Virus record (IMG/VR): IMGVR_UViG_3300018424_000006
Location: 62,001 to 126,000 of that record
Reading direction: 5' to 3' (one strand)
DNA length: 64,000 bases
Position numbers and translations under genes: made by a program. The notes beneath the pieces are model-generated. The model saw only the letters and a program-made list of their open reading frames with translations. It was not told the DNA's origin and did no database searches. Position 1 is the stretch's first letter, and each line of letters begins with the position of its first letter. This document shows, in pieces, positions 11,167-21,856 of this stretch.

Positions 11167-11781
11167 ATGCCTGTAAAATTAAATAGCAAGCCTTACGCGC
11201 TTATCGGTAACCGTAAAGACGTACATCTAGCTTATAGTGAAGAGTTAATCCGAATCGGTTACTACCTATCTAGTGTAGGAGCTTTATTCAGATCCGGTGG
11301 TTCTGGTACGTCAGATAAAAGCGGCGAGGCTGGGGTAGTTCGCTACTACGAAGAAAACGAAAAAGAAGTAGACTATGAAGTATTCTTGCCATGGAAAAAC
11401 TTTGACGCTGCCACCCGACTAAGTCCACCAGAGGCATATAAAACACTAACAAAAGAAATGGAAGAATGGGCTGACGAAATTCTTATTGAAAACAAAGTTT
11501 GTACATTCATTAAGAATCTACCTAGCGGCATTGCTAATATGTTTCGAAGAAATGTCTGTCAGATAATGGGCTATGGACCCGGACAACAATATTCTAAGTT
11601 CGTAGTCTATTATGCAAAAGAAGGTTATCCCAAACGAACTATAAAAGGCGGCACACGTATCGCAGTCTATTTGGCTCGTAAACTAAAGATACCTACCTTT
11701 AATATTGCATTCGAGAAAGACAGAAAAGAATTCAGTCGCTTTACTGGTTATGAGTTCACTGTTCTTGACGGATCATTTTAA
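11167..11781 (+). CDS. SLOG/DprA-like nucleotide-binding protein
   Basis: ALIGNR, RSGG..GxD...EAG, FLPWKNF, RN..QIMG and GGT..AV..A...KIP.FN motifs of the phage DprA-like SLOG family. Confidence 0.75.
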   Translation: MPVKLNSKPYALIGNRKDVHLAYSEELIRIGYYLSSVGALFRSGGSGTSDKSGEAGVVRYYEENEKEVDYEVFLPWKNFDAATRLSPPEAYKTLTKEMEEWADEILIENKVCTFIKNLPSGIANMFRRNVCQIMGYGPGQQYSKFVVYYAKEGYPKRTIKGGTRIAVYLARKLKIPTFNIAFEKDRKEFSRFTGYEFTVLDGSF

Positions 11782-13791: not shown

Positions 13792-14415
13792 CTAGAGACA
13801 CTCGAGTATCTCGATATTTTTAGGGGCCTCTCGACCGTTAGGGTAAGTCACCTTATTCTTTTTCAAGCTAGGTGTAATGTGTAGCGAGTCCATTCCTTCC
13901 CGTCTACTCTTTGTTAGCAGTAGATTGATATAGTCCGGAAGATACTTCTTAAAGCTGCGGATTTTTCTTAAAGTACAAAGTACTACTTTGTAGCGGTCCT
14001 TACCGGAACCCTTTGTAAAATAAGTCACCGGAATTAATCGATCATCACCTTCTAGGTTAAACATAAAGTTTACCTGAGCATTGGTATTATGATCTTTTAA
14101 TTGGGTCAGCTTTTTAATTCCGTCTTCAGGAATCTGGACGTCCTCGTTGTTTGTGTTAAGAGTGCCGTTCTTAGCCCAAACAGTGCAAACTGCAAAGTCG
14201 TCACTGAAATACGTTAATGCCGGAGAAACCAGCACGTTCGTTTTTCTAAACTTAGTAGGTCGGTGTATATCCACTTCTGGAGTGGAGCTAAACGTCACTA
14301 TTAAGGATGGGCTCTTGTAAGCATAGGCTTCCCAATTGACCCTGACATTCTTTACAGTTAGTCCCTCTTCTGTAGTTATAGTTTCCATAGTCCTTTGATA
14401 TGGTTGGTAGTTCAT
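13792..14415 (-). CDS. Early hypothetical protein
   Basis: Directly behind promoter 3; the first ATG is at the predicted TSS, alternative start at 14388. Confidence 0.7.
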   Translation of the reverse strand: MNYQPYQRTMETITTEEGLTVKNVRVNWEAYAYKSPSLIVTFSSTPEVDIHRPTKFRKTNVLVSPALTYFSDDFAVCTVWAKNGTLNTNNEDVQIPEDGIKKLTQLKDHNTNAQVNFMFNLEGDDRLIPVTYFTKGSGKDRYKVVLCTLRKIRSFKKYLPDYINLLLTKSRREGMDSLHITPSLKKNKVTYPNGREAPKNIEILECL

Positions 14416-14419
14416 TAAA

Positions 14420-14450
14420 ATAATATAGATTCATAGTAACCTAGAACACG
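14420..14450 (-). promoter_or_regulatory. Early promoter 3, fused to the portal terminator tail
   Basis: CGTGTTCTAG-N12-CTATATTAT; its first CG is shared with TTATGCCG. Confidence 0.75.
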
Positions 14451-14490
14451 GCATAAAGACTACTATCGACCGAAGCCGATAGTAGTCTTA
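14449..14490 (-). terminator. Portal gene terminator
   Basis: AAGACTACTATCG/CGATAGTAGTCTT stem plus TATGCCG tail. Confidence 0.75.
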
Positions 14491-14497
14491 TAATTAA

Positions 14498-16906
14498 TTA
14501 AAACTCGCCAAAGTCATCACTAGAATCGCCTAGGTCGTCAGTGGATTCTTCACTGAAACCAGAGTCGTTATCCTCACCTTCTGCTCCGGGGTCATCAGAA
14601 CCACCTTCTTCAGAAGTGTCGTCTAAGTTGTCGTCTTCAGCTGGAACGTCATCATCGGAAGAGAACTCATCTTCCTCTCCTTCTGCTCCGCCCTGCTCCT
14701 CTTCTTTCTTAGCCAAACGCTCTTCTTCATCTGCGTCTAACTTATCTTGAAGATCTTCAGTTTTGTTGTCTTGTTTAATATCGACTTTCTTAATATCACG
14801 ATAAGTATCGCCAATAAGCCCTGCCATCATTTCAACATGAGCCTTAATCTTATCTTTAATGCCGCCATTACCTTCAGCAGAAAGTAACTGATCAAGTTCA
14901 GGTAAGATATTTTGGCTACGCATCCAGTCACGGACTAGGGTACTGATCATCATCTCGCGGAAGTTTTCGATGCCGGTAGGCACTGTATCGCCTTCAAACA
15001 TATCGGAAAGCATTTCGTCAGTAAGATAGTTATCAACTGCTATTTCAGCAAACTCACGGAATTTCTGCAGAGCCTCAGAATGTGCCTCAATCTTGGTCGT
15101 ATCTGGTTCAGGGAAAGATACTTCGATACCCAGTAAGATATCTTCCATAGATACTTTCTTTTTACCTATTTCATAAAGATCTTTAAGAAGCTTACCAGAC
15201 CATCGTACATACTTACGTACGTGTTCGGTTGACTGACTACCCAAAATCTTCTGATAGATACGAATACGACGAGCAAGTAGCTTGTTTGACGTTACGATGC
15301 CTGTGGCGAAATCGCCTTGGTACATCTGGTCAACTACTTCAGGAGGCATTCCCATGCCGTGATACTGAGTCTTCTTAAGCTGCTCTTCCATCTGGTCATC
15401 AGGACGAACTCGATCTCGACTATTGTCTTCAATCTCAGCTTTAGTAGACGGAAACGCAGTACCGCCATCAACATTAACCTGAATACCAGAATGCTGTAGG
15501 TTTCTAATCATGTCCGTTGGTTCATGATAGTCCCCTAGAGGTAAACCGTCGTTCTGCATCTTAGAGAATTCAGAAACGATCATGTGAACAGCTTTAACCG
15601 GATCTTGTTCGTCTTCATCTAACGTGATGTTTAGATTAGTACGACCCACCGCATTCTTAACTGAAGAAATCAAGTTAGAGAAAAGCACGGCTGAGCGCAT
15701 AGAAGAATATAGCTTAGTTCTTTCTAGAAGAGATTCACCAATACCTTCTGGAGTATAACTGAAAGCAAAATAAGTAATCAGTTCTTTATCCACATAAAGC
15801 AGCTTGGTTTTCTTATGGGACAGTGCACGCCAGAACATGACGTTATACACTTCTTCAGAATCGGCTACTTCAACATTGCCGCCCACAAGACCATCTTTCA
15901 ATGCTTCTTCTAAGTGGGTATTGATATGCTTATGATAAAGATTAGTTAGTTCCTTAGCACTACTTACTGTATTGCCACCCAAACCAAGTTCTTGAATGAT
16001 CTTGTTTAGATGATTATCATTAGAAGCTGAAAGAGTCTTAAGCTTCTCTGTATGATCGCCATCTGTCACCCTAGATACTGGATAACCGTTCTCGTCGAGA
16101 AGTATATAGAAAGCTAACTGCTTACGAGGGTTACTTGGCTCATGAATAGGGATAACACAATCAAACGGTATGCGCTTAACTAAAGGAGCTTCGCTGGCAT
16201 CGCTAGCATCAATTGGACGGATACTCAGAATGTTTTTATTCTGGTCTCCGTACATATTCTCTAGACCGGCATGTAAAATAGAAGCATTACTTAATGCCTT
16301 ACTTCTTAATTCAGGAGCCGCTAATAACTCTAGGTTATCAGTTACTTCGATGCCTAGTTTATTCGCTTTGCATTTAACAAACGAAGGTGGCTTACTATTC
16401 ATAACCTGAATCTGTCTAGTGAAGCTTTCCAAACCTGCCGTAGCATTAACAGAGCCGGTTACATTTTCAACAATAGGACGAGGAAGGATAAGGGAAGTAT
16501 AACTACCATAATCAAACAGAGCCTCGCGAATAATAGTCGGAATCTCTTCAGAAATATTATAAACTTCGGTGAAGTGCTCATTAAGCTTAGTGGCAATATC
16601 TGCAGCTACTTGCTCGTCTACGTCATCAAGACTTACTTTAATCTCGATATCAGTATCCGTAAAGTCTTTAGGGTTACAGATACTAGACACTAGAATCTCT
16701 TCAACTAATGCAAGGTCAGGAAGTATCTCTTTAATACTCTTGGCTTCTGAACCTTTACGACTTAGTTTATTAAACGTGTCTTCTAAAGAAGCGGTATTAA
16801 CTGTCTTCTTTTTCTTTTTATCTTCAACAATAATCTTTCTCGGAACAGTCGCCTTCTTAATAAGTGCGCTTTCCGTATTACTGCTGATCTTGGATACTTT
16901 TGTCAT
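14498..16906 (-). CDS. Portal protein (phiKZ gp129-like)
   Basis: ILPDL..VEEILVSSI.NP.D, IIREALF..GSY, YFAF.Y...G.G.SLL and VKNAVGRT motifs; acidic tail; synteny. Confidence 0.8.
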   Translation of the reverse strand: MTKVSKISSNTESALIKKATVPRKIIVEDKKKKKTVNTASLEDTFNKLSRKGSEAKSIKEILPDLALVEEILVSSICNPKDFTDTDIEIKVSLDDVDEQVAADIATKLNEHFTEVYNISEEIPTIIREALFDYGSYTSLILPRPIVENVTGSVNATAGLESFTRQIQVMNSKPPSFVKCKANKLGIEVTDNLELLAAPELRSKALSNASILHAGLENMYGDQNKNILSIRPIDASDASEAPLVKRIPFDCVIPIHEPSNPRKQLAFYILLDENGYPVSRVTDGDHTEKLKTLSASNDNHLNKIIQELGLGGNTVSSAKELTNLYHKHINTHLEEALKDGLVGGNVEVADSEEVYNVMFWRALSHKKTKLLYVDKELITYFAFSYTPEGIGESLLERTKLYSSMRSAVLFSNLISSVKNAVGRTNLNITLDEDEQDPVKAVHMIVSEFSKMQNDGLPLGDYHEPTDMIRNLQHSGIQVNVDGGTAFPSTKAEIEDNSRDRVRPDDQMEEQLKKTQYHGMGMPPEVVDQMYQGDFATGIVTSNKLLARRIRIYQKILGSQSTEHVRKYVRWSGKLLKDLYEIGKKKVSMEDILLGIEVSFPEPDTTKIEAHSEALQKFREFAEIAVDNYLTDEMLSDMFEGDTVPTGIENFREMMISTLVRDWMRSQNILPELDQLLSAEGNGGIKDKIKAHVEMMAGLIGDTYRDIKKVDIKQDNKTEDLQDKLDADEEERLAKKEEEQGGAEGEEDEFSSDDDVPAEDDNLDDTSEEGGSDDPGAEGEDNDSGFSEESTDDLGDSSDDFGEF

Positions 16907-16908
16907 CT

Positions 16909-18330
16909 TTAAACCTCAGTGGGTATATAAATGTCGCGAAGGGCCGGGTGTCCCATATTCTTTAAGATCCCTAAAACATATACGGCAGAGTTACTGAAAC
17001 TCATAAATTCCAGATCCCAGTTATATTTTAATTCGCCTGTCTTGGCAAACGCCTTATTGACATTAAGAGTTCTTAACAAAAGATCAAGCGGACAATTAAG
17101 TAGCTGTGACCTTAAGTTATCTTTAAAATGGACCGGAAAACCTTTACGTGCTAGTCGGCTATCCTCTACTTCTAGGATGTCGATAGGATGGAAAGAATAT
17201 CTAAATAAAGCATGAAGTGAATCGTCGCTAATATCCGAGATATCAATTTTTAGATCGCTATAGAACTTCTTTATCTGAGCTGTCTTGATGCCATGACATT
17301 TGTGATTAATGCAAGCGTAATAGCCGCCAATTAACCTAAGGTCATGTTCACAAGAACTGCAGTGAGGCCTGGACTCTGTACCGGGATCTATGACATCTTT
17401 AATAATGAAGTTATCTTCTTTATCTTTGGCCATCATAACCATAGCCCCACGATTTAGTTTCTTTTCGGTCAAGAGAAGAGTGTCATCTAACTTAATTGTA
17501 AATCGCTTACGTGGAGACGAAACAGAATATATCTCAACTCCTGCAATCCCTTTATGGTTAGGTGTGAATGTGAGGTCTGTAAAATTTACCCGAATGCCTT
17601 CCGATTCGGCATTAATAAGATTCCATTCAAACGGATTCTTTCTGCCCACTGGAAGATTTTGATCAAAAAGATATGCTTCGCGACATTCTCTAAAATCTTC
17701 GGCAAAGTTTAAATCAAATAGTCTATCGGCATTAGAAGAATACGGTTGTAGATCAGACCCTCTAAGAATAGTCTCAGGAATCATTCTAAAACCTAGCTTC
17801 TTTAAATAGACTCTTTGGGTCTTGTAGTCGGAACTAATGGTTTCTGGATCAAATTTAAAAGTCCCATAAATGAAGATATCGATTAACTTAGCATGATCCT
17901 TATCTTTAACCAAGTAGTATGGGACCTTACTATAAATACTCTTCTCACCAGAATGTCTTATCGTAGCAACTCCTCTCAATTCCATACTAGCAAAGCTAGT
18001 AAGTTTCTTCGGAATTAAATTTGCTTCTACTAAATAGGAAGTAATATCTTCTCCAGAACAGCCATCGCCAAAAGTAATTGCGCTAACTAAAGTTCCGCTA
18101 GCGTATTTAGCCGTAAATTCGATTCCTAATGGCCGAGGAATAATGACATAGGACTTATTTAGATCTATATCTTTACAAAACTCTTTCATTGGCTCCTTTG
18201 TTGTAAGGATTGGACCAAAATGAAAGTTGTGTCTGATTTTCTGTGTTATTAATCTACTGTTTTCCAGTGACTTCAGAGGGAATTTGAACTCGTTCTTTTC
18301 CTCTTTCGTTAGCTGCGAAAATATATGCAT
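16909..18330 (-). CDS. NAD-dependent DNA ligase homolog with degenerate active site
   Basis: SAITFGDGCSGEDIT and ELRG match the LigA adenylation domain; C4 Zn finger CSSC...CINHKC; motif I KxDG is RPLG; no BRCT-like tail seen. Confidence 0.7.
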   Translation of the reverse strand: MHIFSQLTKEEKNEFKFPLKSLENSRLITQKIRHNFHFGPILTTKEPMKEFCKDIDLNKSYVIIPRPLGIEFTAKYASGTLVSAITFGDGCSGEDITSYLVEANLIPKKLTSFASMELRGVATIRHSGEKSIYSKVPYYLVKDKDHAKLIDIFIYGTFKFDPETISSDYKTQRVYLKKLGFRMIPETILRGSDLQPYSSNADRLFDLNFAEDFRECREAYLFDQNLPVGRKNPFEWNLINAESEGIRVNFTDLTFTPNHKGIAGVEIYSVSSPRKRFTIKLDDTLLLTEKKLNRGAMVMMAKDKEDNFIIKDVIDPGTESRPHCSSCEHDLRLIGGYYACINHKCHGIKTAQIKKFYSDLKIDISDISDDSLHALFRYSFHPIDILEVEDSRLARKGFPVHFKDNLRSQLLNCPLDLLLRTLNVNKAFAKTGELKYNWDLEFMSFSNSAVYVLGILKNMGHPALRDIYIPTEV

Positions 18331-18342
18331 GGGAGTCTCCTA

Positions 18343-20439
18343 ATGCGTTCAGAACTATATAAAATCTATCGAGATAGTAATATTTCTCTCGCTAGAAGTA
18401 TTGTTGTAAAATCTGAAGATTCTATTGTCGCTATTAATGATTACTTTAATGCCATGGGCAGGACAGTAGATAGCGATCCGAAGACTTGGAAGTATTACCT
18501 AAACCTAGCAGGTGAGTATCATTGGTCGGATACGCCGATGGAAGTAATATCCTCAGATACTCAGCAGCTTATCCCTTTTACTAAGGAAGTACTGGTCGAT
18601 CACCCCCTTACTCGATTTGAATATCGTAGAGGTGGCTCTGAACGACACCGTATTCTTTCTGCTTATCCTAAGCAAGAGATATTAATAGATAGAATACTTG
18701 ATCCAGTTGATATCGATAAAGCTATTGCTGCAGACAACATGGACATCCTTTTTTGGGATAGTACGCTAGTAGCCTCTAACGAACTTAACCTTATCCCTGA
18801 ATTACAAAGATGGATTAAGCGTTTTAATTTACGTTGGAATGTTACCTCTATGTCCGTAACGGATGGCCTATATCCTTCCGTATTTTTAGCTAATCTTTAT
18901 TTAGCGATGGTGAATGAAATTTCTAACATTCGTATCTCTAATATAAAGACGCCCTATGCCTCTCAATGGCATATATGGACTTACCTATCTGGCCATCTAG
19001 GCTTAGATAAGTATCAAGAATATTTAAGTATTGAGCAGTCATTATGGCTATATCGTAATATCGAATATATTCGTCGTAACGCAGGTAAAGAATATACTCT
19101 GGACTTGCTAGTTGAGAACCTTATTAAGACAACCGGTTTGTCCGCTAATAAGTTCGACATGATGAAGGCCGATGACTTACTTAAAGATTATAACATCATT
19201 AGCATCAAGACAAACAAAAGCGATGTTGACGACGTTAATCCAATAGTCGATCCAGGCTCTTTACTTGATCCATATTTAACTATGGATGCAACTAAGACTA
19301 GGGCTTTGGAAAACGACTCGAATAAAGATATTGATGCTGAGATTTTTGAGAAGGCTGCTTTAGCCAACCCAACAACCATTCGTCAAGTACCAATGTACGA
19401 GATTACTCAGCAATTAAGTGTACTTAGTCGATTTAACAACCACCTTCAACTGCAATCTGACTACTGGATTTATTTATCTGCTATAGGTAGATACACTGGC
19501 TCCTTTACCATCCCTATTCCGGGACAGAATGCAGTAAACCTTTCTCCTAAAGAAGCTTTGATTCTTATGGTTTATTGTAGCAATAAAGCTAACGGATATC
19601 TTCTAACGGATATACCTAAGCTTTTTGTAACTGGAGTAATTCCTGAGACTTATCCAGATAAGTCTGTTATACAAGGCATGCTTGATGAAGAACAGGTGAA
19701 GGTTACCGAAGTGGTTAATGAGTTAACTACGGACTTAGTTAAGCTAAAAACATTGACTAGTCTGTCTAGCTTAATTCAGTTTGTCGACTCTGTTACGGTT
19801 CAGAATCTCAAGCATTATTTTGCCGGAAGGCATGCTCGCGACACTCACGGAAAGAGTATGATCGAATCTGCCAGTCTAGCGCTGCTCGATAAACGAGACT
19901 GCCTATTGGCCCCTGAAGGTACAAAATATGTTGACTGGTTTAATTTCTTAGACTTAGATGTATCGACACTCTCAAACGAAGATTTACTAGAGGTTGTGAT
20001 CAGCTGTCTTAAGACAGTGGGTGGGATAGATGAAACTTCTACTGGTCTTCCTATTCAACAACTGTCGATGTTGGAATTATTAGACTACTTAACCTCTTAT
20101 GGCTTTATAGTCGTAGAAGGTCGAGCGTTTAATGCTAACTCGACTATAGAATGGTTCTTCTCTCAATATTCTAACTTTGACGTAAGTCTAGAATATTACG
20201 GAGCAATTGATCTGGATGCTAATACGCTTGGCAGCTCAGATAATGTTTCTGTTACTATTGAAGATAGCTATTCGGTTGAAATAAATAACAAAGAACTTAA
20301 GAACTCGGGTATCCATGACGAATTCAGAGATATTCAAGTGGGTACTAGCCCTACAAGTTCAATGGAATCCTCCGGTACTACATTTGCTGAAATAAGTAAA
20401 ACGCTTATAACAAATGCGACCGTAACAGTTACTGATTAA
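18343..20439 (+). CDS. Virion structural/baseplate protein (phiKZ gp128-like)
   Basis: DPKTWKYYLNLAGEYH and LWLYRNIEYIRRNAGK motifs; RBS GGGAG; divergent from the portal. Confidence 0.75.
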   Translation: MRSELYKIYRDSNISLARSIVVKSEDSIVAINDYFNAMGRTVDSDPKTWKYYLNLAGEYHWSDTPMEVISSDTQQLIPFTKEVLVDHPLTRFEYRRGGSERHRILSAYPKQEILIDRILDPVDIDKAIAADNMDILFWDSTLVASNELNLIPELQRWIKRFNLRWNVTSMSVTDGLYPSVFLANLYLAMVNEISNIRISNIKTPYASQWHIWTYLSGHLGLDKYQEYLSIEQSLWLYRNIEYIRRNAGKEYTLDLLVENLIKTTGLSANKFDMMKADDLLKDYNIISIKTNKSDVDDVNPIVDPGSLLDPYLTMDATKTRALENDSNKDIDAEIFEKAALANPTTIRQVPMYEITQQLSVLSRFNNHLQLQSDYWIYLSAIGRYTGSFTIPIPGQNAVNLSPKEALILMVYCSNKANGYLLTDIPKLFVTGVIPETYPDKSVIQGMLDEEQVKVTEVVNELTTDLVKLKTLTSLSSLIQFVDSVTVQNLKHYFAGRHARDTHGKSMIESASLALLDKRDCLLAPEGTKYVDWFNFLDLDVSTLSNEDLLEVVISCLKTVGGIDETSTGLPIQQLSMLELLDYLTSYGFIVVEGRAFNANSTIEWFFSQYSNFDVSLEYYGAIDLDANTLGSSDNVSVTIEDSYSVEINNKELKNSGIHDEFRDIQVGTSPTSSMESSGTTFAEISKTLITNATVTVTD

Positions 20440-20456: not shown

Positions 20457-21290
20457 ATGTCTTTTTCTACAGTTAAAACTATGCATCTAGATATGCTGGA
20501 AACCACGCGTTCTATCGAAGGGGCGTTCAGCACAATGCAATATTCGACTTTAAATGAAAAGTTTAATATTGAACAGGATACTGATTTACCACCAGGCGAA
20601 TATCCTAAGATTCGCTATATTGCAATCGGTAATGGCGGGCACCGTAACGTAAGTGGCGGAAACGGCGGCCTTCAGGATATCCTGCAGCATTCTGTAACAG
20701 ACGCTGCCTTATTCAACCACTTACCCTTCATCATGCGCGAAACAAATGACGACCTTACTCCGTCTGAGCGTGAGAAATATCGTCTACGTAAAGTAGAAGT
20801 GCATGGCGGTAAGGAATACTACGTCTATTACCTTCGTAAAGTAACTCTAAGTACAACTACTCCACAGGTAAGTACTATTGATACTGACAATGGTAGTACG
20901 ACTACCCAAGAGTTTACACCGTCTAGTTCTATGCTTTCTCCTACTCCAGTAACTATGGAAAATGGTAAAGTAGTAGAGACTACTGGTAAACATATCTCTG
21001 TGCAGGTTCCGGTTAAGATCGAACTGACTCAGACTGATATTCAAGAAATCATTAATGCAGCCGAGATCATTCATGGCGATAGTCGTTACGCTATCATTTC
21101 CGAGATCTCCATTGTGTCTGCTATTGACTTGACAGTAAACTCTACCCAAGGCGGTAACAATGTAAACTACACTGAGGCCGTCGGGGCACAGTGTTGTAAC
21201 TTCATTGGTGCAAACACCAACCTTAATGCTAGCAACAAGCTTGTAACCCTAAACTATGACTTAGGTACTACACAGCCTCTATTGCTATAA
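20457..21290 (+). CDS. Conserved phiKZ-like virion/baseplate protein (gp139-like)
   Basis: STLNEKF, YIAIGNGGH, HLPFIMR...DL...ER.KYRLR and YAIISEI motifs; precedes RuvC. Confidence 0.7.
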   Translation: MSFSTVKTMHLDMLETTRSIEGAFSTMQYSTLNEKFNIEQDTDLPPGEYPKIRYIAIGNGGHRNVSGGNGGLQDILQHSVTDAALFNHLPFIMRETNDDLTPSEREKYRLRKVEVHGGKEYYVYYLRKVTLSTTTPQVSTIDTDNGSTTTQEFTPSSSMLSPTPVTMENGKVVETTGKHISVQVPVKIELTQTDIQEIINAAEIIHGDSRYAIISEISIVSAIDLTVNSTQGGNNVNYTEAVGAQCCNFIGANTNLNASNKLVTLNYDLGTTQPLLL

Positions 21291-21301
21291 GGTAAGACTC
21301 T

Positions 21302-21856
21302 ATGTCTACTCCAAAGTTCCGGGTCATCTCAATTGACCCGGGATCTAATAATACTGGATTTTCCGTTATTGATTTTGATCCTTCAACCGGATGGAAAGAT
21401 ATAATCTTTTCTGAAACCATTAATCAGAAAGACTCTACCGCTAACCAGAAGGCTCTAATTGAGATTTATGGCGAGAGACCTATTAGAATTAAGCAGGTGA
21501 CGAAATTCCTAGGCGAACTAATTGACACATATGAGCCCGACGTGGTGGTATCAGAAGCTCCTTTTATGGGACGGTTTCCTGCCGCATTTAGGGCTCTGGC
21601 TGAATTAGTTTTTGCATTCAAGGCACTAGTGATTGAGCGTTATTCTCCATTGGAATTTGTAGATGTCGATCCTCCTAGTGTAAAGAAAGCAATGGGAGTG
21701 AATGGTAAAAGCAGTGATAAAGACGACATGACCAATGCTTTGATCAGTCGAGACGATTTATCATATGCAGAGGATATTAATGTGACTGCTCTTGATGAGC
21801 ATGCTGTTGATAGTATCTGTGTAGGTCTATGGTTTATAGGCACTATAAGTAAATAG
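21302..21856 (+). CDS. ruvC: Holliday junction resolvase RuvC
   Basis: ISIDPGS..TG, VVSE, P..VKKAMG..G...K..M and DEHAVDS catalytic motifs. Confidence 0.9.
   Translation: MSTPKFRVISIDPGSNNTGFSVIDFDPSTGWKDIIFSETINQKDSTANQKALIEIYGERPIRIKQVTKFLGELIDTYEPDVVVSEAPFMGRFPAAFRALAELVFAFKALVIERYSPLEFVDVDPPSVKKAMGVNGKSSDKDDMTNALISRDDLSYAEDINVTALDEHAVDSICVGLWFIGTISK

What the first reader, a model, noticed from the sequence alone, without database searches (positions are those of the whole stretch)
16909..18330. Catalytically dead NAD-dependent ligase homolog placed directly upstream of the portal gene
Seen: LigA-like sequence in which motif I KxDG is R66-PLG, TRGDG is TFGDG and EVRGE is ELRGV. Motifs IV/V are unrecognisable and there is no BRCT tail. 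The 473-aa frame is intact and the C4 zinc finger is kept. Its stop is 2 nt from the portal ATG, whose RBS lies inside it. Established: the motif I Lys is the essential adenylation site. Inference: an exapted nick/DNA-end-binding protein linked to packaging, or a decoy/inhibitor of host LigA or of a defence system.
Basis: partly seen in the sequence, partly recalled or inferred. Interest (0 to 1): 0.62.

Follow-up and report, generated by a model that had tools for sequence, protein, structure and literature searches.

The report
Dead ligase gene ahead of portal
An uncultured salt-marsh jumbo phage carries, just upstream of its portal gene, a decayed copy of a DNA ligase that related phages keep intact at the same spot; it has lost its catalytic, NAD-binding and DNA-contact residues, and a second, normal ligase elsewhere in the genome probably does the ligation.

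Summary
It is a true NAD-dependent ligase (LigA) homolog with NTase, OB, C4 zinc-finger and HhH domains. Domain Ia is reduced to a vestige and there is no BRCT.

Lost: motif I Lys and Asp (R66, L68), the TRG Arg (F87), the motif III Glu (V121), the R/N loop, motifs IV and V (N240), the OB DNA-contact motif and the HhH glycine hairpins.

New context: it is not an orphan insertion. Four related uncultured phiKZ-like phages have a 532-557 aa BRCT-less LigA in the same slot (baseplate-wedge gene, divergent, then LigA, then portal), and all keep the catalytic residues.

This phage also encodes a canonical 658-aa LigA in an SbcC/thymidylate-synthase/DHFR module. One relative has no LigA at the matching place.

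Most likely it is an ex-enzyme made redundant. Its frame and fold are still maintained, and it is probably co-expressed with the portal. No near relatives exist, so dN/dS cannot be computed. Interest is moderate.

The parts
16909..18330 (-). LigA-derived ORF, 473 aa from M1 (P0001). The alternative start M48 at 18189 gives the 426-aa public gene call (P0003). Stop TAA at 16911-16909.
18337..18341 (-). AGGAG Shine-Dalgarno 6 nt upstream of ATG 18330. An in-frame TAG at 18342-18340 closes the frame four codons upstream, so the ancestral 5' end (first helix of domain Ia) is gone.
   Evidence: read directly from the sequence
18286..18312 (-). Vestige of the second helix of domain Ia (residues 7-15, LTKEEKNEF). 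K9 and N13 stand where LigAs have the two NMN-binding Asp residues.
17602..18246 (-). Degenerate nucleotidyltransferase domain (about residues 29-243). Motif I is R66-P-L68-G69 (18124-18135); also F87, V121 and N240. The R/N loop is deleted and motif IV is unrecognisable (pLDDT below 56 over residues 201-240).
17377..17601 (-). OB-fold domain (about residues 244-318), shortened, with the DNA-contact motifs replaced (D283, N307, F308).
17281..17376 (-). C4 zinc finger (C324, C327, C340, C345), fully retained.
16912..17280 (-). Truncated helix-hairpin-helix domain (residues 351-473). The hairpin glycines are mostly lost and net charge is -1. It ends like the orthologs, without a BRCT.
16914..16917 (-). 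GAGG Shine-Dalgarno of the portal gene, inside the last codons of the ligase-like ORF. There are 2 nt between the stop and the portal ATG.
14498..16906 (-). Portal gene (802 aa, phiKZ gp129 homolog, phrog_3004 at 1e-153), with a long acidic C-terminal tail.
18343..20439 (+). Divergent neighbour, the phiKZ gp128-like baseplate-wedge protein (phrog_3222). Its probable start is ATG 18343 with GGGAG 7 nt upstream, only 12 nt from the ligase-like ATG on the other strand.
20457..21290 (+). gp127-like baseplate protein (DUF7208); part of the conserved synteny block.
21302..21856 (+). RuvC-like Holliday-junction resolvase (phrog_159 at 9e-33); context only.

Best explanation
The gene is this phage's ortholog of a short, BRCT-less NAD-dependent DNA ligase. 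A small clade of uncultured phiKZ-like jumbo phages carries that ligase between the divergent baseplate-wedge gene and the portal gene, in the same orientation as the portal and 0-13 nt from it.

In the four relatives the enzyme keeps the ligase chemistry: domain Ia, motif I K-x-D-G, EVRGE, the motif IV DG and the motif V Lys. The TRG Arg is kept in three of the four.

In this phage the copy has lost the first helix of domain Ia, the adenylated Lys and its Asp, the TRG Arg, the motif III Glu, the R/N loop, motifs IV and V, the OB and HhH DNA-contact motifs, and the positive charge of the HhH domain. It keeps the fold-defining glycines and all four zinc cysteines.

The genome also holds a canonical full-length LigA (658 aa) in its SbcC/thymidylate-synthase/DHFR module, which can supply ligation.

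Shown: homology, motif loss, synteny, the second ligase, and an intact frame.

Inferred: redundancy relaxed selection on the portal-linked copy, which became an ex-enzyme that neither adenylates nor clamps nicked DNA.

My committed reading (about 45%): it has no trans-acting activity of its own. Its frame is kept open mainly because it is the leading cistron of the portal unit, where a stop or frameshift would disturb expression of the essential portal gene. Its fold is kept because a misfolded late protein is costly.

The identity part (dead, degenerate ortholog of a portal-linked ligase) I hold at about 0.85-0.9.
For: Homology and fold.

Loss of invariant residues. Of 38 highly conserved LigA columns, P0001 keeps 19 and the syntenic orthologs keep 31-34.

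Synteny gp127-like <- gp128-like | LigA -> portal in four independent contigs, with intact motifs.

G000's flanking proteins (portal, gp128-like, gp127-like) are 30-43% identical to those of the relatives, but the ligase only 19-25%. Between the relatives themselves, ligase identity tracks flank identity. P0001 has the longest terminal branch in both trees.

Canonical LigA in the same genome: 715 bits to NF005932, typical codon use, in an SbcC/ThyA/DHFR module, 43-46% identical to marine gammaproteobacterial LigA.

In the closest relative, about 65 kb of 182 kb was read, including its SbcC/thymidylate-synthase module. It holds no second LigA.

Relaxed but coding signature: codon score at the 10th percentile, GC 37.5% against 41.0 +/- 2.3%.

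Intact frame: P(open by chance) about 1e-13.

Tight stop-start junction with the portal: here and in the relatives.

Contigs from four salt-marsh metatranscriptome libraries cover parts of the gene at 100% identity.
Against: No experiment has been done.

The gene is a singleton. There is no ortholog above 25% identity among 1.84 billion representatives or in JGI contigs, so dN/dS cannot be measured.

Structural residues are kept better than polar functional ones (15/23 against 4/15, Fisher p = 0.045), and all four Cys survive. That points to selection on the folded product and so fits a trans-acting role at least as well as a purely cis role.

The portal has its own well-spaced SD, so translational coupling is possible but not shown.

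The absence of a second LigA in relatives was checked in only one of them, over about a third of its genome.

Tree placement with the syntenic clade is unstable. With 62 rows it pairs with another long branch. With 28 rows it joins the clade at SH-aLRT 87.

RNA-library contigs cannot prove transcription, strand or start, and no contig from the four runs covers 18080-18477.
Confidence: 0.5

Rival explanations
1. Exapted pseudoenzyme. The folded LigA scaffold has a new, non-catalytic, trans-acting job tied to head assembly or packaging, for example binding the portal, terminase or another protein, or an atypical DNA structure. It would be made together with the portal.
For: The frame stayed open over a period long enough to replace 11 of 15 invariant polar residues. 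Structural glycines and all four zinc cysteines are kept. The predicted fold is confident over most of the chain. The gene is co-oriented with the portal and 2 nt from it. A RuvC-like resolvase is nearby. Nicks block the T4 packaging motor (PMC3012670), so a ligase-packaging link has precedent.
Against: The canonical DNA-contact motifs and the HhH positive charge are lost. No other phage carries this dead form. The position is inherited from an active ligase. The co-fold with the portal gave no answer. Codon adaptation is below average.
Confidence: 0.3
2. Decoy or inhibitor. The dead ligase competes with host LigA, or with a defence system that senses nicks, NAD+ or ligase, and so acts as a counter-defence factor.
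For: Only general plausibility: it has a LigA-like shape without chemistry.
Against: The NAD-binding domain Ia and the DNA-contact residues are gone, so it offers little to compete for. It is expressed from the structural (late) module; no early-promoter-like motif lies upstream, unlike many genes of this genome. It is a singleton. PADLOC was not scanned.
Confidence: 0.07
3. A non-expressed or only recently dead pseudogene that merely has not yet acquired a stop.
For: There is a 5' truncation with only 12 nt left between the divergent start codons. The coding score is low for codons 1-47. No RNA-library contig covers 18080-18477.
Against: 473 open codons in a 41% GC genome (P about 1e-13). In-frame codon score is +0.14 against -0.94 and -1.40 out of frame. 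Near-saturation replacement at catalytic sites implies a long time without a stop or frameshift. RNA-library contigs cover 16886-18079.
Confidence: 0.1
4. Still an active ligase that uses another lysine or unusual chemistry.
For: None found. E117 and R119 of motif III and possibly D223 remain.
Against: Lost together: the motif I Lys and Asp, the TRG Arg, the motif III Glu, the R/N loop, motif IV Gly and Lys, the motif V Lys and domain Ia. From my own knowledge of the Shuman-laboratory mutational studies of E. coli LigA, each of these is individually essential. K115 is the residue mutated in PDB 5TT5 (entry title).
Confidence: 0.03

Closest known systems
Portal-linked short LigA of related uncultured jumbo phages (L006:6390-7988, L008:6386-7993, L009:4162-5769 = P0004, and P0025)
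   Same: Same slot: gp127-like <- gp128-like | LigA -> portal. Same domain set without a BRCT, a similar C-terminal end, and a tight junction with the portal gene. P0004 is the best non-self hit of the exhaustive search.
   Different: They are 532-557 aa and keep domain Ia and all catalytic residues. P0001 is 473 aa, is 19-25% identical to them where the flanking genes are 30-43%, and has lost those residues.
Bacterial NAD-dependent DNA ligase LigA (E. coli LigA, PDB 2OWO/5TT5), and this phage's own 658-aa LigA
   Same: NTase-OB-Zn-HhH order and fold; C4 zinc finger.
   Different: No functional domain Ia, no BRCT and no adenylation lysine. Motifs I, III, IV and V and the DNA-contact motifs are lost. 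It scores 46 bits against a 444-bit equivalog cut-off.
E. coli LigB (LigA paralog; from my own knowledge)
   Same: A second, reduced LigA-type protein in a genome that also has a full LigA; it lacks the BRCT.
   Different: LigB keeps the catalytic motifs and weak activity and has lost two zinc cysteines. P0001 shows the reverse pattern: zinc site kept, chemistry lost. The NCBIfam LigB model hit is only 15.6 bits.
Heterodimeric NAD-type ligase of T5-like phage PR1 (PDB 9HU3/9I5I)
   Same: A phage-specific remodelling of the LigA architecture; structural match at E about 1e-10.
   Different: It is a split but active enzyme solved on nicked DNA (entry titles). It is not a dead single chain.
P0013, a 504-aa degenerate LigA on a 4.5-kb metagenomic contig
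   Same: Another LigA with damaged motifs: motif I D->V and G->A, EVRGE largely replaced. It has a long branch and pairs with P0001 in the large tree.
   Different: It keeps the motif I Lys and TRG Arg, and it lies next to a helicase-like gene rather than a portal. The pairing is flagged as long-branch attraction and dissolves in the smaller tree.

Membership tests
NAD-dependent DNA ligase (LigA, EC 6.5.1.2) | Sequence homology of the adenylation (NTase) domain | tested here: met
   PF01653 scores 31.4 bits against a cut-off of 27. An independent LigA HMM scores 121 bits.
NAD-dependent DNA ligase (LigA, EC 6.5.1.2) | Motif I K-x-D-G with the adenylated lysine | tested here: not met
   The motif reads R66-P-L68-G69, while 59/59 aligned LigAs have K and 58/59 have D.
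NAD-dependent DNA ligase (LigA, EC 6.5.1.2) | Domain Ia (NMN-binding, needed for reaction with NAD+) | tested here: not met
   Only a vestigial helix remains, with K9 and N13 in place of the two Asp. The conserved Tyr column is a gap, and an in-frame stop lies 4 codons upstream of M1.
NAD-dependent DNA ligase (LigA, EC 6.5.1.2) | Motifs III, IV and V, the TRG arginine and the R/N loop | tested here: not met
   F87, V121 and N240 replace the conserved residues, the R/N loop is deleted, and motif IV DG-V-K is absent. E117 and R119 are retained.
NAD-dependent DNA ligase (LigA, EC 6.5.1.2) | OB domain with its DNA-contact motifs | tested here: not met
   The fold is predicted, but N->D283, I->N307 and P->F308, and about 12 residues are deleted.
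NAD-dependent DNA ligase (LigA, EC 6.5.1.2) | C4 zinc finger | tested here: met
   C324, C327, C340 and C345 align with the four invariant Cys.
NAD-dependent DNA ligase (LigA, EC 6.5.1.2) | HhH domain with glycine hairpins | tested here: inconclusive
   It is helical and collinear with LigA (NF010930 hit over residues 323-408). Most hairpin glycines are replaced and net charge is -1.
NAD-dependent DNA ligase (LigA, EC 6.5.1.2) | BRCT domain | tested here: not met
   Absent. It is also absent from the intact syntenic orthologs.
NAD-dependent DNA ligase (LigA, EC 6.5.1.2) | Curated equivalog score | tested here: not met
   TIGR00575 scores 46.4 bits against a cut-off of 444; NF005932 scores 39 against 369.
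NAD-dependent DNA ligase (LigA, EC 6.5.1.2) | Adenylylation and nick-sealing activity | not testable with these tools
   This needs the purified protein.
Portal-linked BRCT-less LigA clade of uncultured phiKZ-like phages (defined here) | Position between the divergent gp128-like gene and the portal gene, co-oriented with the portal | tested here: met
Portal-linked BRCT-less LigA clade of uncultured phiKZ-like phages (defined here) | Phylogenetic grouping with the clade | tested here: inconclusive
   In the 28-row tree it is on one side of a branch with the four others (SH-aLRT 87). In the 62-row tree it pairs with P0013, flagged as long-branch attraction. The AU test on the large set did not finish.
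Portal-linked BRCT-less LigA clade of uncultured phiKZ-like phages (defined here) | Intact catalytic residues | tested here: not met
   the four others keep K, D, G, E and K; P0001 does not.

The most novel reading that the evidence does not exclude
The dead ligase has been recruited as a non-catalytic packaging or head-assembly factor. It would be a folded LigA-shaped adaptor made stoichiometrically with the portal, binding the portal, terminase or the incoming DNA end in a new way. More broadly, the conserved LigA-portal gene pair would mark a previously unrecognised ligase step coupled to genome packaging in a clade of jumbo phages.
Probability: 0.15. Interest if true: 0.7.

Novelty: new variant of a known kind. 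Interest (0 to 1): 0.38.

Why it matters
This is a clean natural example of how an essential-type enzyme becomes a pseudoenzyme. The intact ancestral state is visible in sister phages at the same locus, a plausible cause (a second, canonical ligase) sits in the same genome, and the decay has removed chemistry, cofactor binding and substrate binding while sparing the fold.

It also brings out a conserved ligase-portal gene pair in an uncultured clade of phiKZ-like phages. That pair could reflect a need to seal nicks before packaging.

For annotation, it warns that this gene passes the Pfam gathering threshold for 'DNA_ligase_aden' and would be named a ligase although it almost certainly is not one.

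Tried and rejected
- Plus-strand reading of the coordinates: full of stops.
- megablast and tblastn of the gene against 50,697 phage records: no match.
- Word-index protein search: only the gene itself, as a 426-aa call.
- Exhaustive HMMER search of 1.84 billion representatives: nothing closer than E 6e-8.
- IMG/VR scan with the portal protein: no close relatives.
- IMG/VR scan with a portal alignment: only relatives at 21-27% identity, without a LigA near the portal. Five of those records, including two with terminal repeats, have no LigA adenylation domain at all.
- JGI metagenome scan with the protein: only the source contig, so no population or ortholog data for dN/dS. A second public assembly of the phage is 100% identical over 15.3 kb.
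- The genome search on ENA/Logan loci: records not held.
- Complex prediction of portal residues 230-720 with the protein: no answer, which is neither support nor evidence against binding.
- Sigma-70 promoter and intrinsic-terminator scan of 14300-18700: not above shuffled expectation.
- The early-promoter-like motif enriched in this genome: no copy upstream of the ligase-like gene or the portal.
- AU test of clade monophyly on 62 rows: did not finish in two runs. It was replaced by a 28-row tree.
- Literature searches for a described dead LigA, or a LigA-portal link in jumbo phages: nothing relevant; one query was malformed.
- The pairing of P0001 with P0013 as real kinship: rejected, because the genomic context differs and the pairing is a flagged long-branch artefact.
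Full report
**1. The observation**

The 473-codon open frame at window 16909-18330 is real but lies on the minus strand. The plus strand at these coordinates is full of stops.

The stop codon TAA occupies 16911-16909. Two bases later, ATG 16906 opens an 802-aa gene whose GAGG ribosome-binding site (16917-16914) lies within the last codons of the frame.

That downstream gene matches PHROG 3004 at 1e-153 and finds portal homologs in 276 phage records. Its PhiPA3 homolog is annotated as similar to phiKZ gp129. gp129 is the portal in the cryo-EM atlas of phiKZ (PMC13250141).

The window lies in a 219,819-bp IMG/VR virus record with direct terminal repeats. That record encodes a phiKZ-type major head protein, a polymerase-family protein (phrog_2943), a DNA polymerase and internal head proteins.

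**2. It is a LigA derivative**

- Pfam PF01653 scores 31.4 bits, just above its cut-off of 27, over residues 60-128.
- PHROG NAD-ligase families hit at 2.8e-13.
- NCBIfam LigA models hit two collinear stretches, residues 55-133 and 323-408, but at about one tenth of the equivalog cut-offs.
- PDB sequence hits are all LigA adenylation domains.
- An HMM built from 59 LigAs without this protein scores it at 121 bits, E 1e-36.
- An AlphaFold2 model made with that alignment has mean pLDDT 73.7. Its best structural matches are full-length LigAs (2owo_A, E 5e-19, 480 aligned columns). Because the alignment consisted of LigAs, the model leans towards that fold; the HMM score is the more independent evidence.

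**3. Motif states**

Against 59 LigAs, and again in an independent re-alignment with the orthologs:

| Feature | State in P0001 | State in other LigAs |
|---|---|---|
| Motif I Lys | R66 | K in 59/59 |
| Motif I Asp | L68 | D in 58/59 |
| TRGDG Arg | F87 | R in 58/59 |
| EVRGE second Glu | V121 | E in 58/59 |
| N-x-R-N-x-A-x-G loop | deleted | present |
| Motif IV DG-V-K | absent, at most a lone D223 (alignment-dependent) | present |
| Motif V Lys | N240 | K in 57/59 |
| OB-domain LHN Asn | D283 | N |
| OB-domain GDVIP | N307/F308 | I-P |
| HhH hairpin glycines | mostly replaced | present |

- Domain Ia survives only as one vestigial helix, with K9 and N13 where LigAs have the two conserved Asp. 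An in-frame TAG four codons upstream of M1 shows the ancestral 5' end is gone.
- Retained residues: H34, G69, Y76, G79, T86, G88, G90, G93, D95, E117, R119, G120, G261, G264 and all four zinc cysteines (C324, C327, C340, C345).
- Of 38 columns conserved in at least 85% of canonical LigAs (outside the BRCT), P0001 keeps 19.
- Polar functional residues are kept 4/15, against 15/23 for glycine, cysteine and hydrophobic ones (Fisher p = 0.045). This is suggestive, not strong.

**4. The start codon is uncertain**

- M1 (18330) has AGGAG six bases upstream. Local alignments to many LigAs extend into residues 8-47.
- The public gene call starts at M48 (18189), giving 426 aa.
- Codons 1-47 have a neutral coding score.
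- No RNA-library contig covers 18080-18477.
- With M1, the start codons of this gene and of the divergent gp128-like gene (probable start 18343, GGGAG seven bases upstream) are only 12 nt apart. One relative also has a very short divergent gap of 22 nt.

**5. The key new finding is orthologs by synteny**

The exhaustive search found no close relative. The nearest portal relatives (35-36% identity) and the contig of the best weak hit P0004, however, all show the same gene order: DUF7208/gp127-like <- gp128-like | LigA (532, 535 or 535 aa) -> portal. A fifth phage (P0025, 557 aa) shows the same core order, gp128-like | LigA -> portal; its first gene is cut off and unassigned.

These ligases lack a BRCT and end like P0001. 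They keep domain Ia, K-x-D-G, EVRGE, the motif IV DG and the motif V Lys; three of the four also keep the TRG Arg (S in P0025). They retain 31-34 of the 38 conserved columns.

More distant portal relatives (21-27%) have no LigA near the portal. Five such IMG/VR records, two of them with terminal repeats, have none at all. Cultured phiKZ-like phages place their ligase elsewhere.

So the ligase-portal pair is a clade-specific inherited arrangement, and P0001 is its only decayed member.

**6. Rate of change**

- G000's portal, gp128-like and gp127-like proteins are 30-43% identical to those of the relatives, while the ligase is 19-25% identical.
- Between the relatives themselves, ligase identity (30-53%) tracks flank identity.
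- P0001 has the longest terminal branch in both trees (3.0 against a median of 1.14; 2.12 against 0.95).
- Placement is unstable. With 62 rows it joins another long branch, P0013, which sits in an unrelated context. With 28 rows it forms one side of a branch with the four syntenic ligases (SH-aLRT 87).

**7. A second, normal ligase**

The same genome encodes a 658-aa LigA with every domain including the BRCT (715 bits to NF005932).

- It lies between an SbcC-like gene and a thymidylate synthase on one side and a DHFR on the other.
- Its composition and codon use are typical of the genome.
- It is 43-46% identical to LigA of marine Gammaproteobacteria such as Kangiella and Spongiibacter, and only 28% identical to the ligase of Shewanella phage FishSpeaker.

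I walked about 65 kb of the 182-kb genome of the closest relative, including its SbcC-like gene and the thymidylate-synthase-family gene downstream of it. I found no second LigA there. This is partial support for the idea that the extra ligase is particular to this phage.

**8. Is the gene still alive?**

- The frame is open over 473 codons. The chance in random sequence of this composition is about 1e-13.
- The in-frame codon score is +0.14 per codon, against -0.94 and -1.40 out of frame. It sits at the 10th percentile of the genome's genes, and GC is 37.5% against 41.0 +/- 2.3%.
- Replacement of 11 of 15 invariant polar residues implies roughly 1.3 changes per such site. By my own rough estimate, a frame drifting neutrally for that long would have collected tens of stops.
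- The frame, the zinc site and much of the fold are therefore under selection, while ligase-specific residues are not.
- No polymorphism data exist. A second assembly is identical and JGI holds only the source contig.
- The phage occurs in salt-marsh metagenomes. Contigs from four metatranscriptome libraries cover parts of the gene (16886-18079), the portal and the gp128-like gene at 100% identity. DNA carry-over cannot be excluded, and neither strand nor transcript ends can be read from contigs.

**9. Mechanism**

Shown: a LigA-fold protein without the residues for adenylation, NAD+ binding or LigA-style DNA clamping. It is inherited in the portal's gene unit, in a genome with a canonical ligase.

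Inferred: redundancy relaxed selection and the enzyme died. Its frame persists either because it is the leading cistron of the essential portal gene (stop-start distance of 2 nt here, and 7-13 nt or a 4-nt overlap in relatives) or because the folded product has a new role.

- A co-fold with the portal gave no answer and counts neither way.
- For the intact orthologs, a packaging-related ligation role is a reasonable conjecture. Nicks block the T4 packaging motor (PMC3012670). From my own recollection, T4 ligase is required for encapsidation (Zachary and Black 1981; not retrieved here). A RuvC-like resolvase, whose products need sealing, sits three genes away.

**10. Verdict**

'Catalytically dead' is well supported by sequence. 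The exaptation and decoy ideas are not supported.

The gene is a new, non-catalytic variant of a known enzyme family, and the last decayed member of a newly recognised portal-linked ligase clade. Interest is moderate: an instructive case of pseudoenzyme birth and an annotation trap, but a singleton with no functional evidence.

None of the operators' special restrictions came into play.

Noticed in passing
G000:C1:11866-13842 (= L002:1240-3216, L025:7867-9843), outside the window: A canonical 658-aa LigA with a BRCT lies between an SbcC-like gene and a thymidylate synthase on one side and a DHFR on the other. Its best hits are marine gammaproteobacterial LigAs at 43-46% identity, which hints at the host lineage or the donor.
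   Followed up: yes
window 18325-18345, both strands: Back-to-back starts. The ligase-like ATG (18330, minus strand) and the probable gp128-like ATG (18343, plus strand) are 12 nt apart, and their Shine-Dalgarno sequences (AGGAG / GGGAG) occupy adjacent, slightly overlapping positions on opposite strands (18337-18341 and 18331-18335). Any promoter for either gene must lie inside the other gene.
   Followed up: partly
genome-wide; example at window 14421 (minus strand), upstream of the gene 13792-14415: A motif TCTATATTAC (heptamers up to 15.7-fold enriched in upstream gaps) resembles, as I recall it, the phiKZ early-promoter consensus TATATTAC. It is absent upstream of the ligase-like gene and the portal.
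   Followed up: partly
window 14498-14760 (portal residues about 715-802): The portal ends in a roughly 85-residue, extremely acidic and probably disordered tail rich in D, E, S and G. A similar tail appears in the consensus of the clade's portals.
   Followed up: no
L023:2805-4319 (P0013, Logan ERR13731082): An independent degenerate LigA of 504 aa. Motif I Asp and Gly and most of EVRGE are replaced, while the Lys is kept. It lies next to a ResIII helicase-like gene and could be a second case of ligase decay.
   Followed up: partly
L006:6390-7988 and L008:6386-7993: The otherwise intact portal-linked ligases of the two closest relatives read DGIVLTV where LigAs have DG-V-K, so the motif IV Lys is a Thr. 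L009 has Q for the conserved loop Arg. Their activity may already be atypical.
   Followed up: no
window 21302-21856 (+) and 11167-11781 (+); L006:10355-10972: A RuvC-like resolvase (phrog_159) and a DprA-like protein (phrog_768) lie near the portal. In the closest relative the DprA-like gene is directly next to the portal.
   Followed up: partly
window 14498-20439 in runs X1-X9: The phage is found in several salt-marsh metagenomes and metatranscriptomes from 2018, with a small share of words in one aquaculture metagenome from 2022. In four RNA libraries, no contig covers 18080-18477 or 18677-18875.
   Followed up: partly
L028:11756-18625 (relative, ENA ERZ650163 NODE_17): A 2,289-aa protein with a weak DUF285 hit lies about 10 kb downstream of the portal in the closest relative. 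No counterpart was sought in the window.
   Followed up: no
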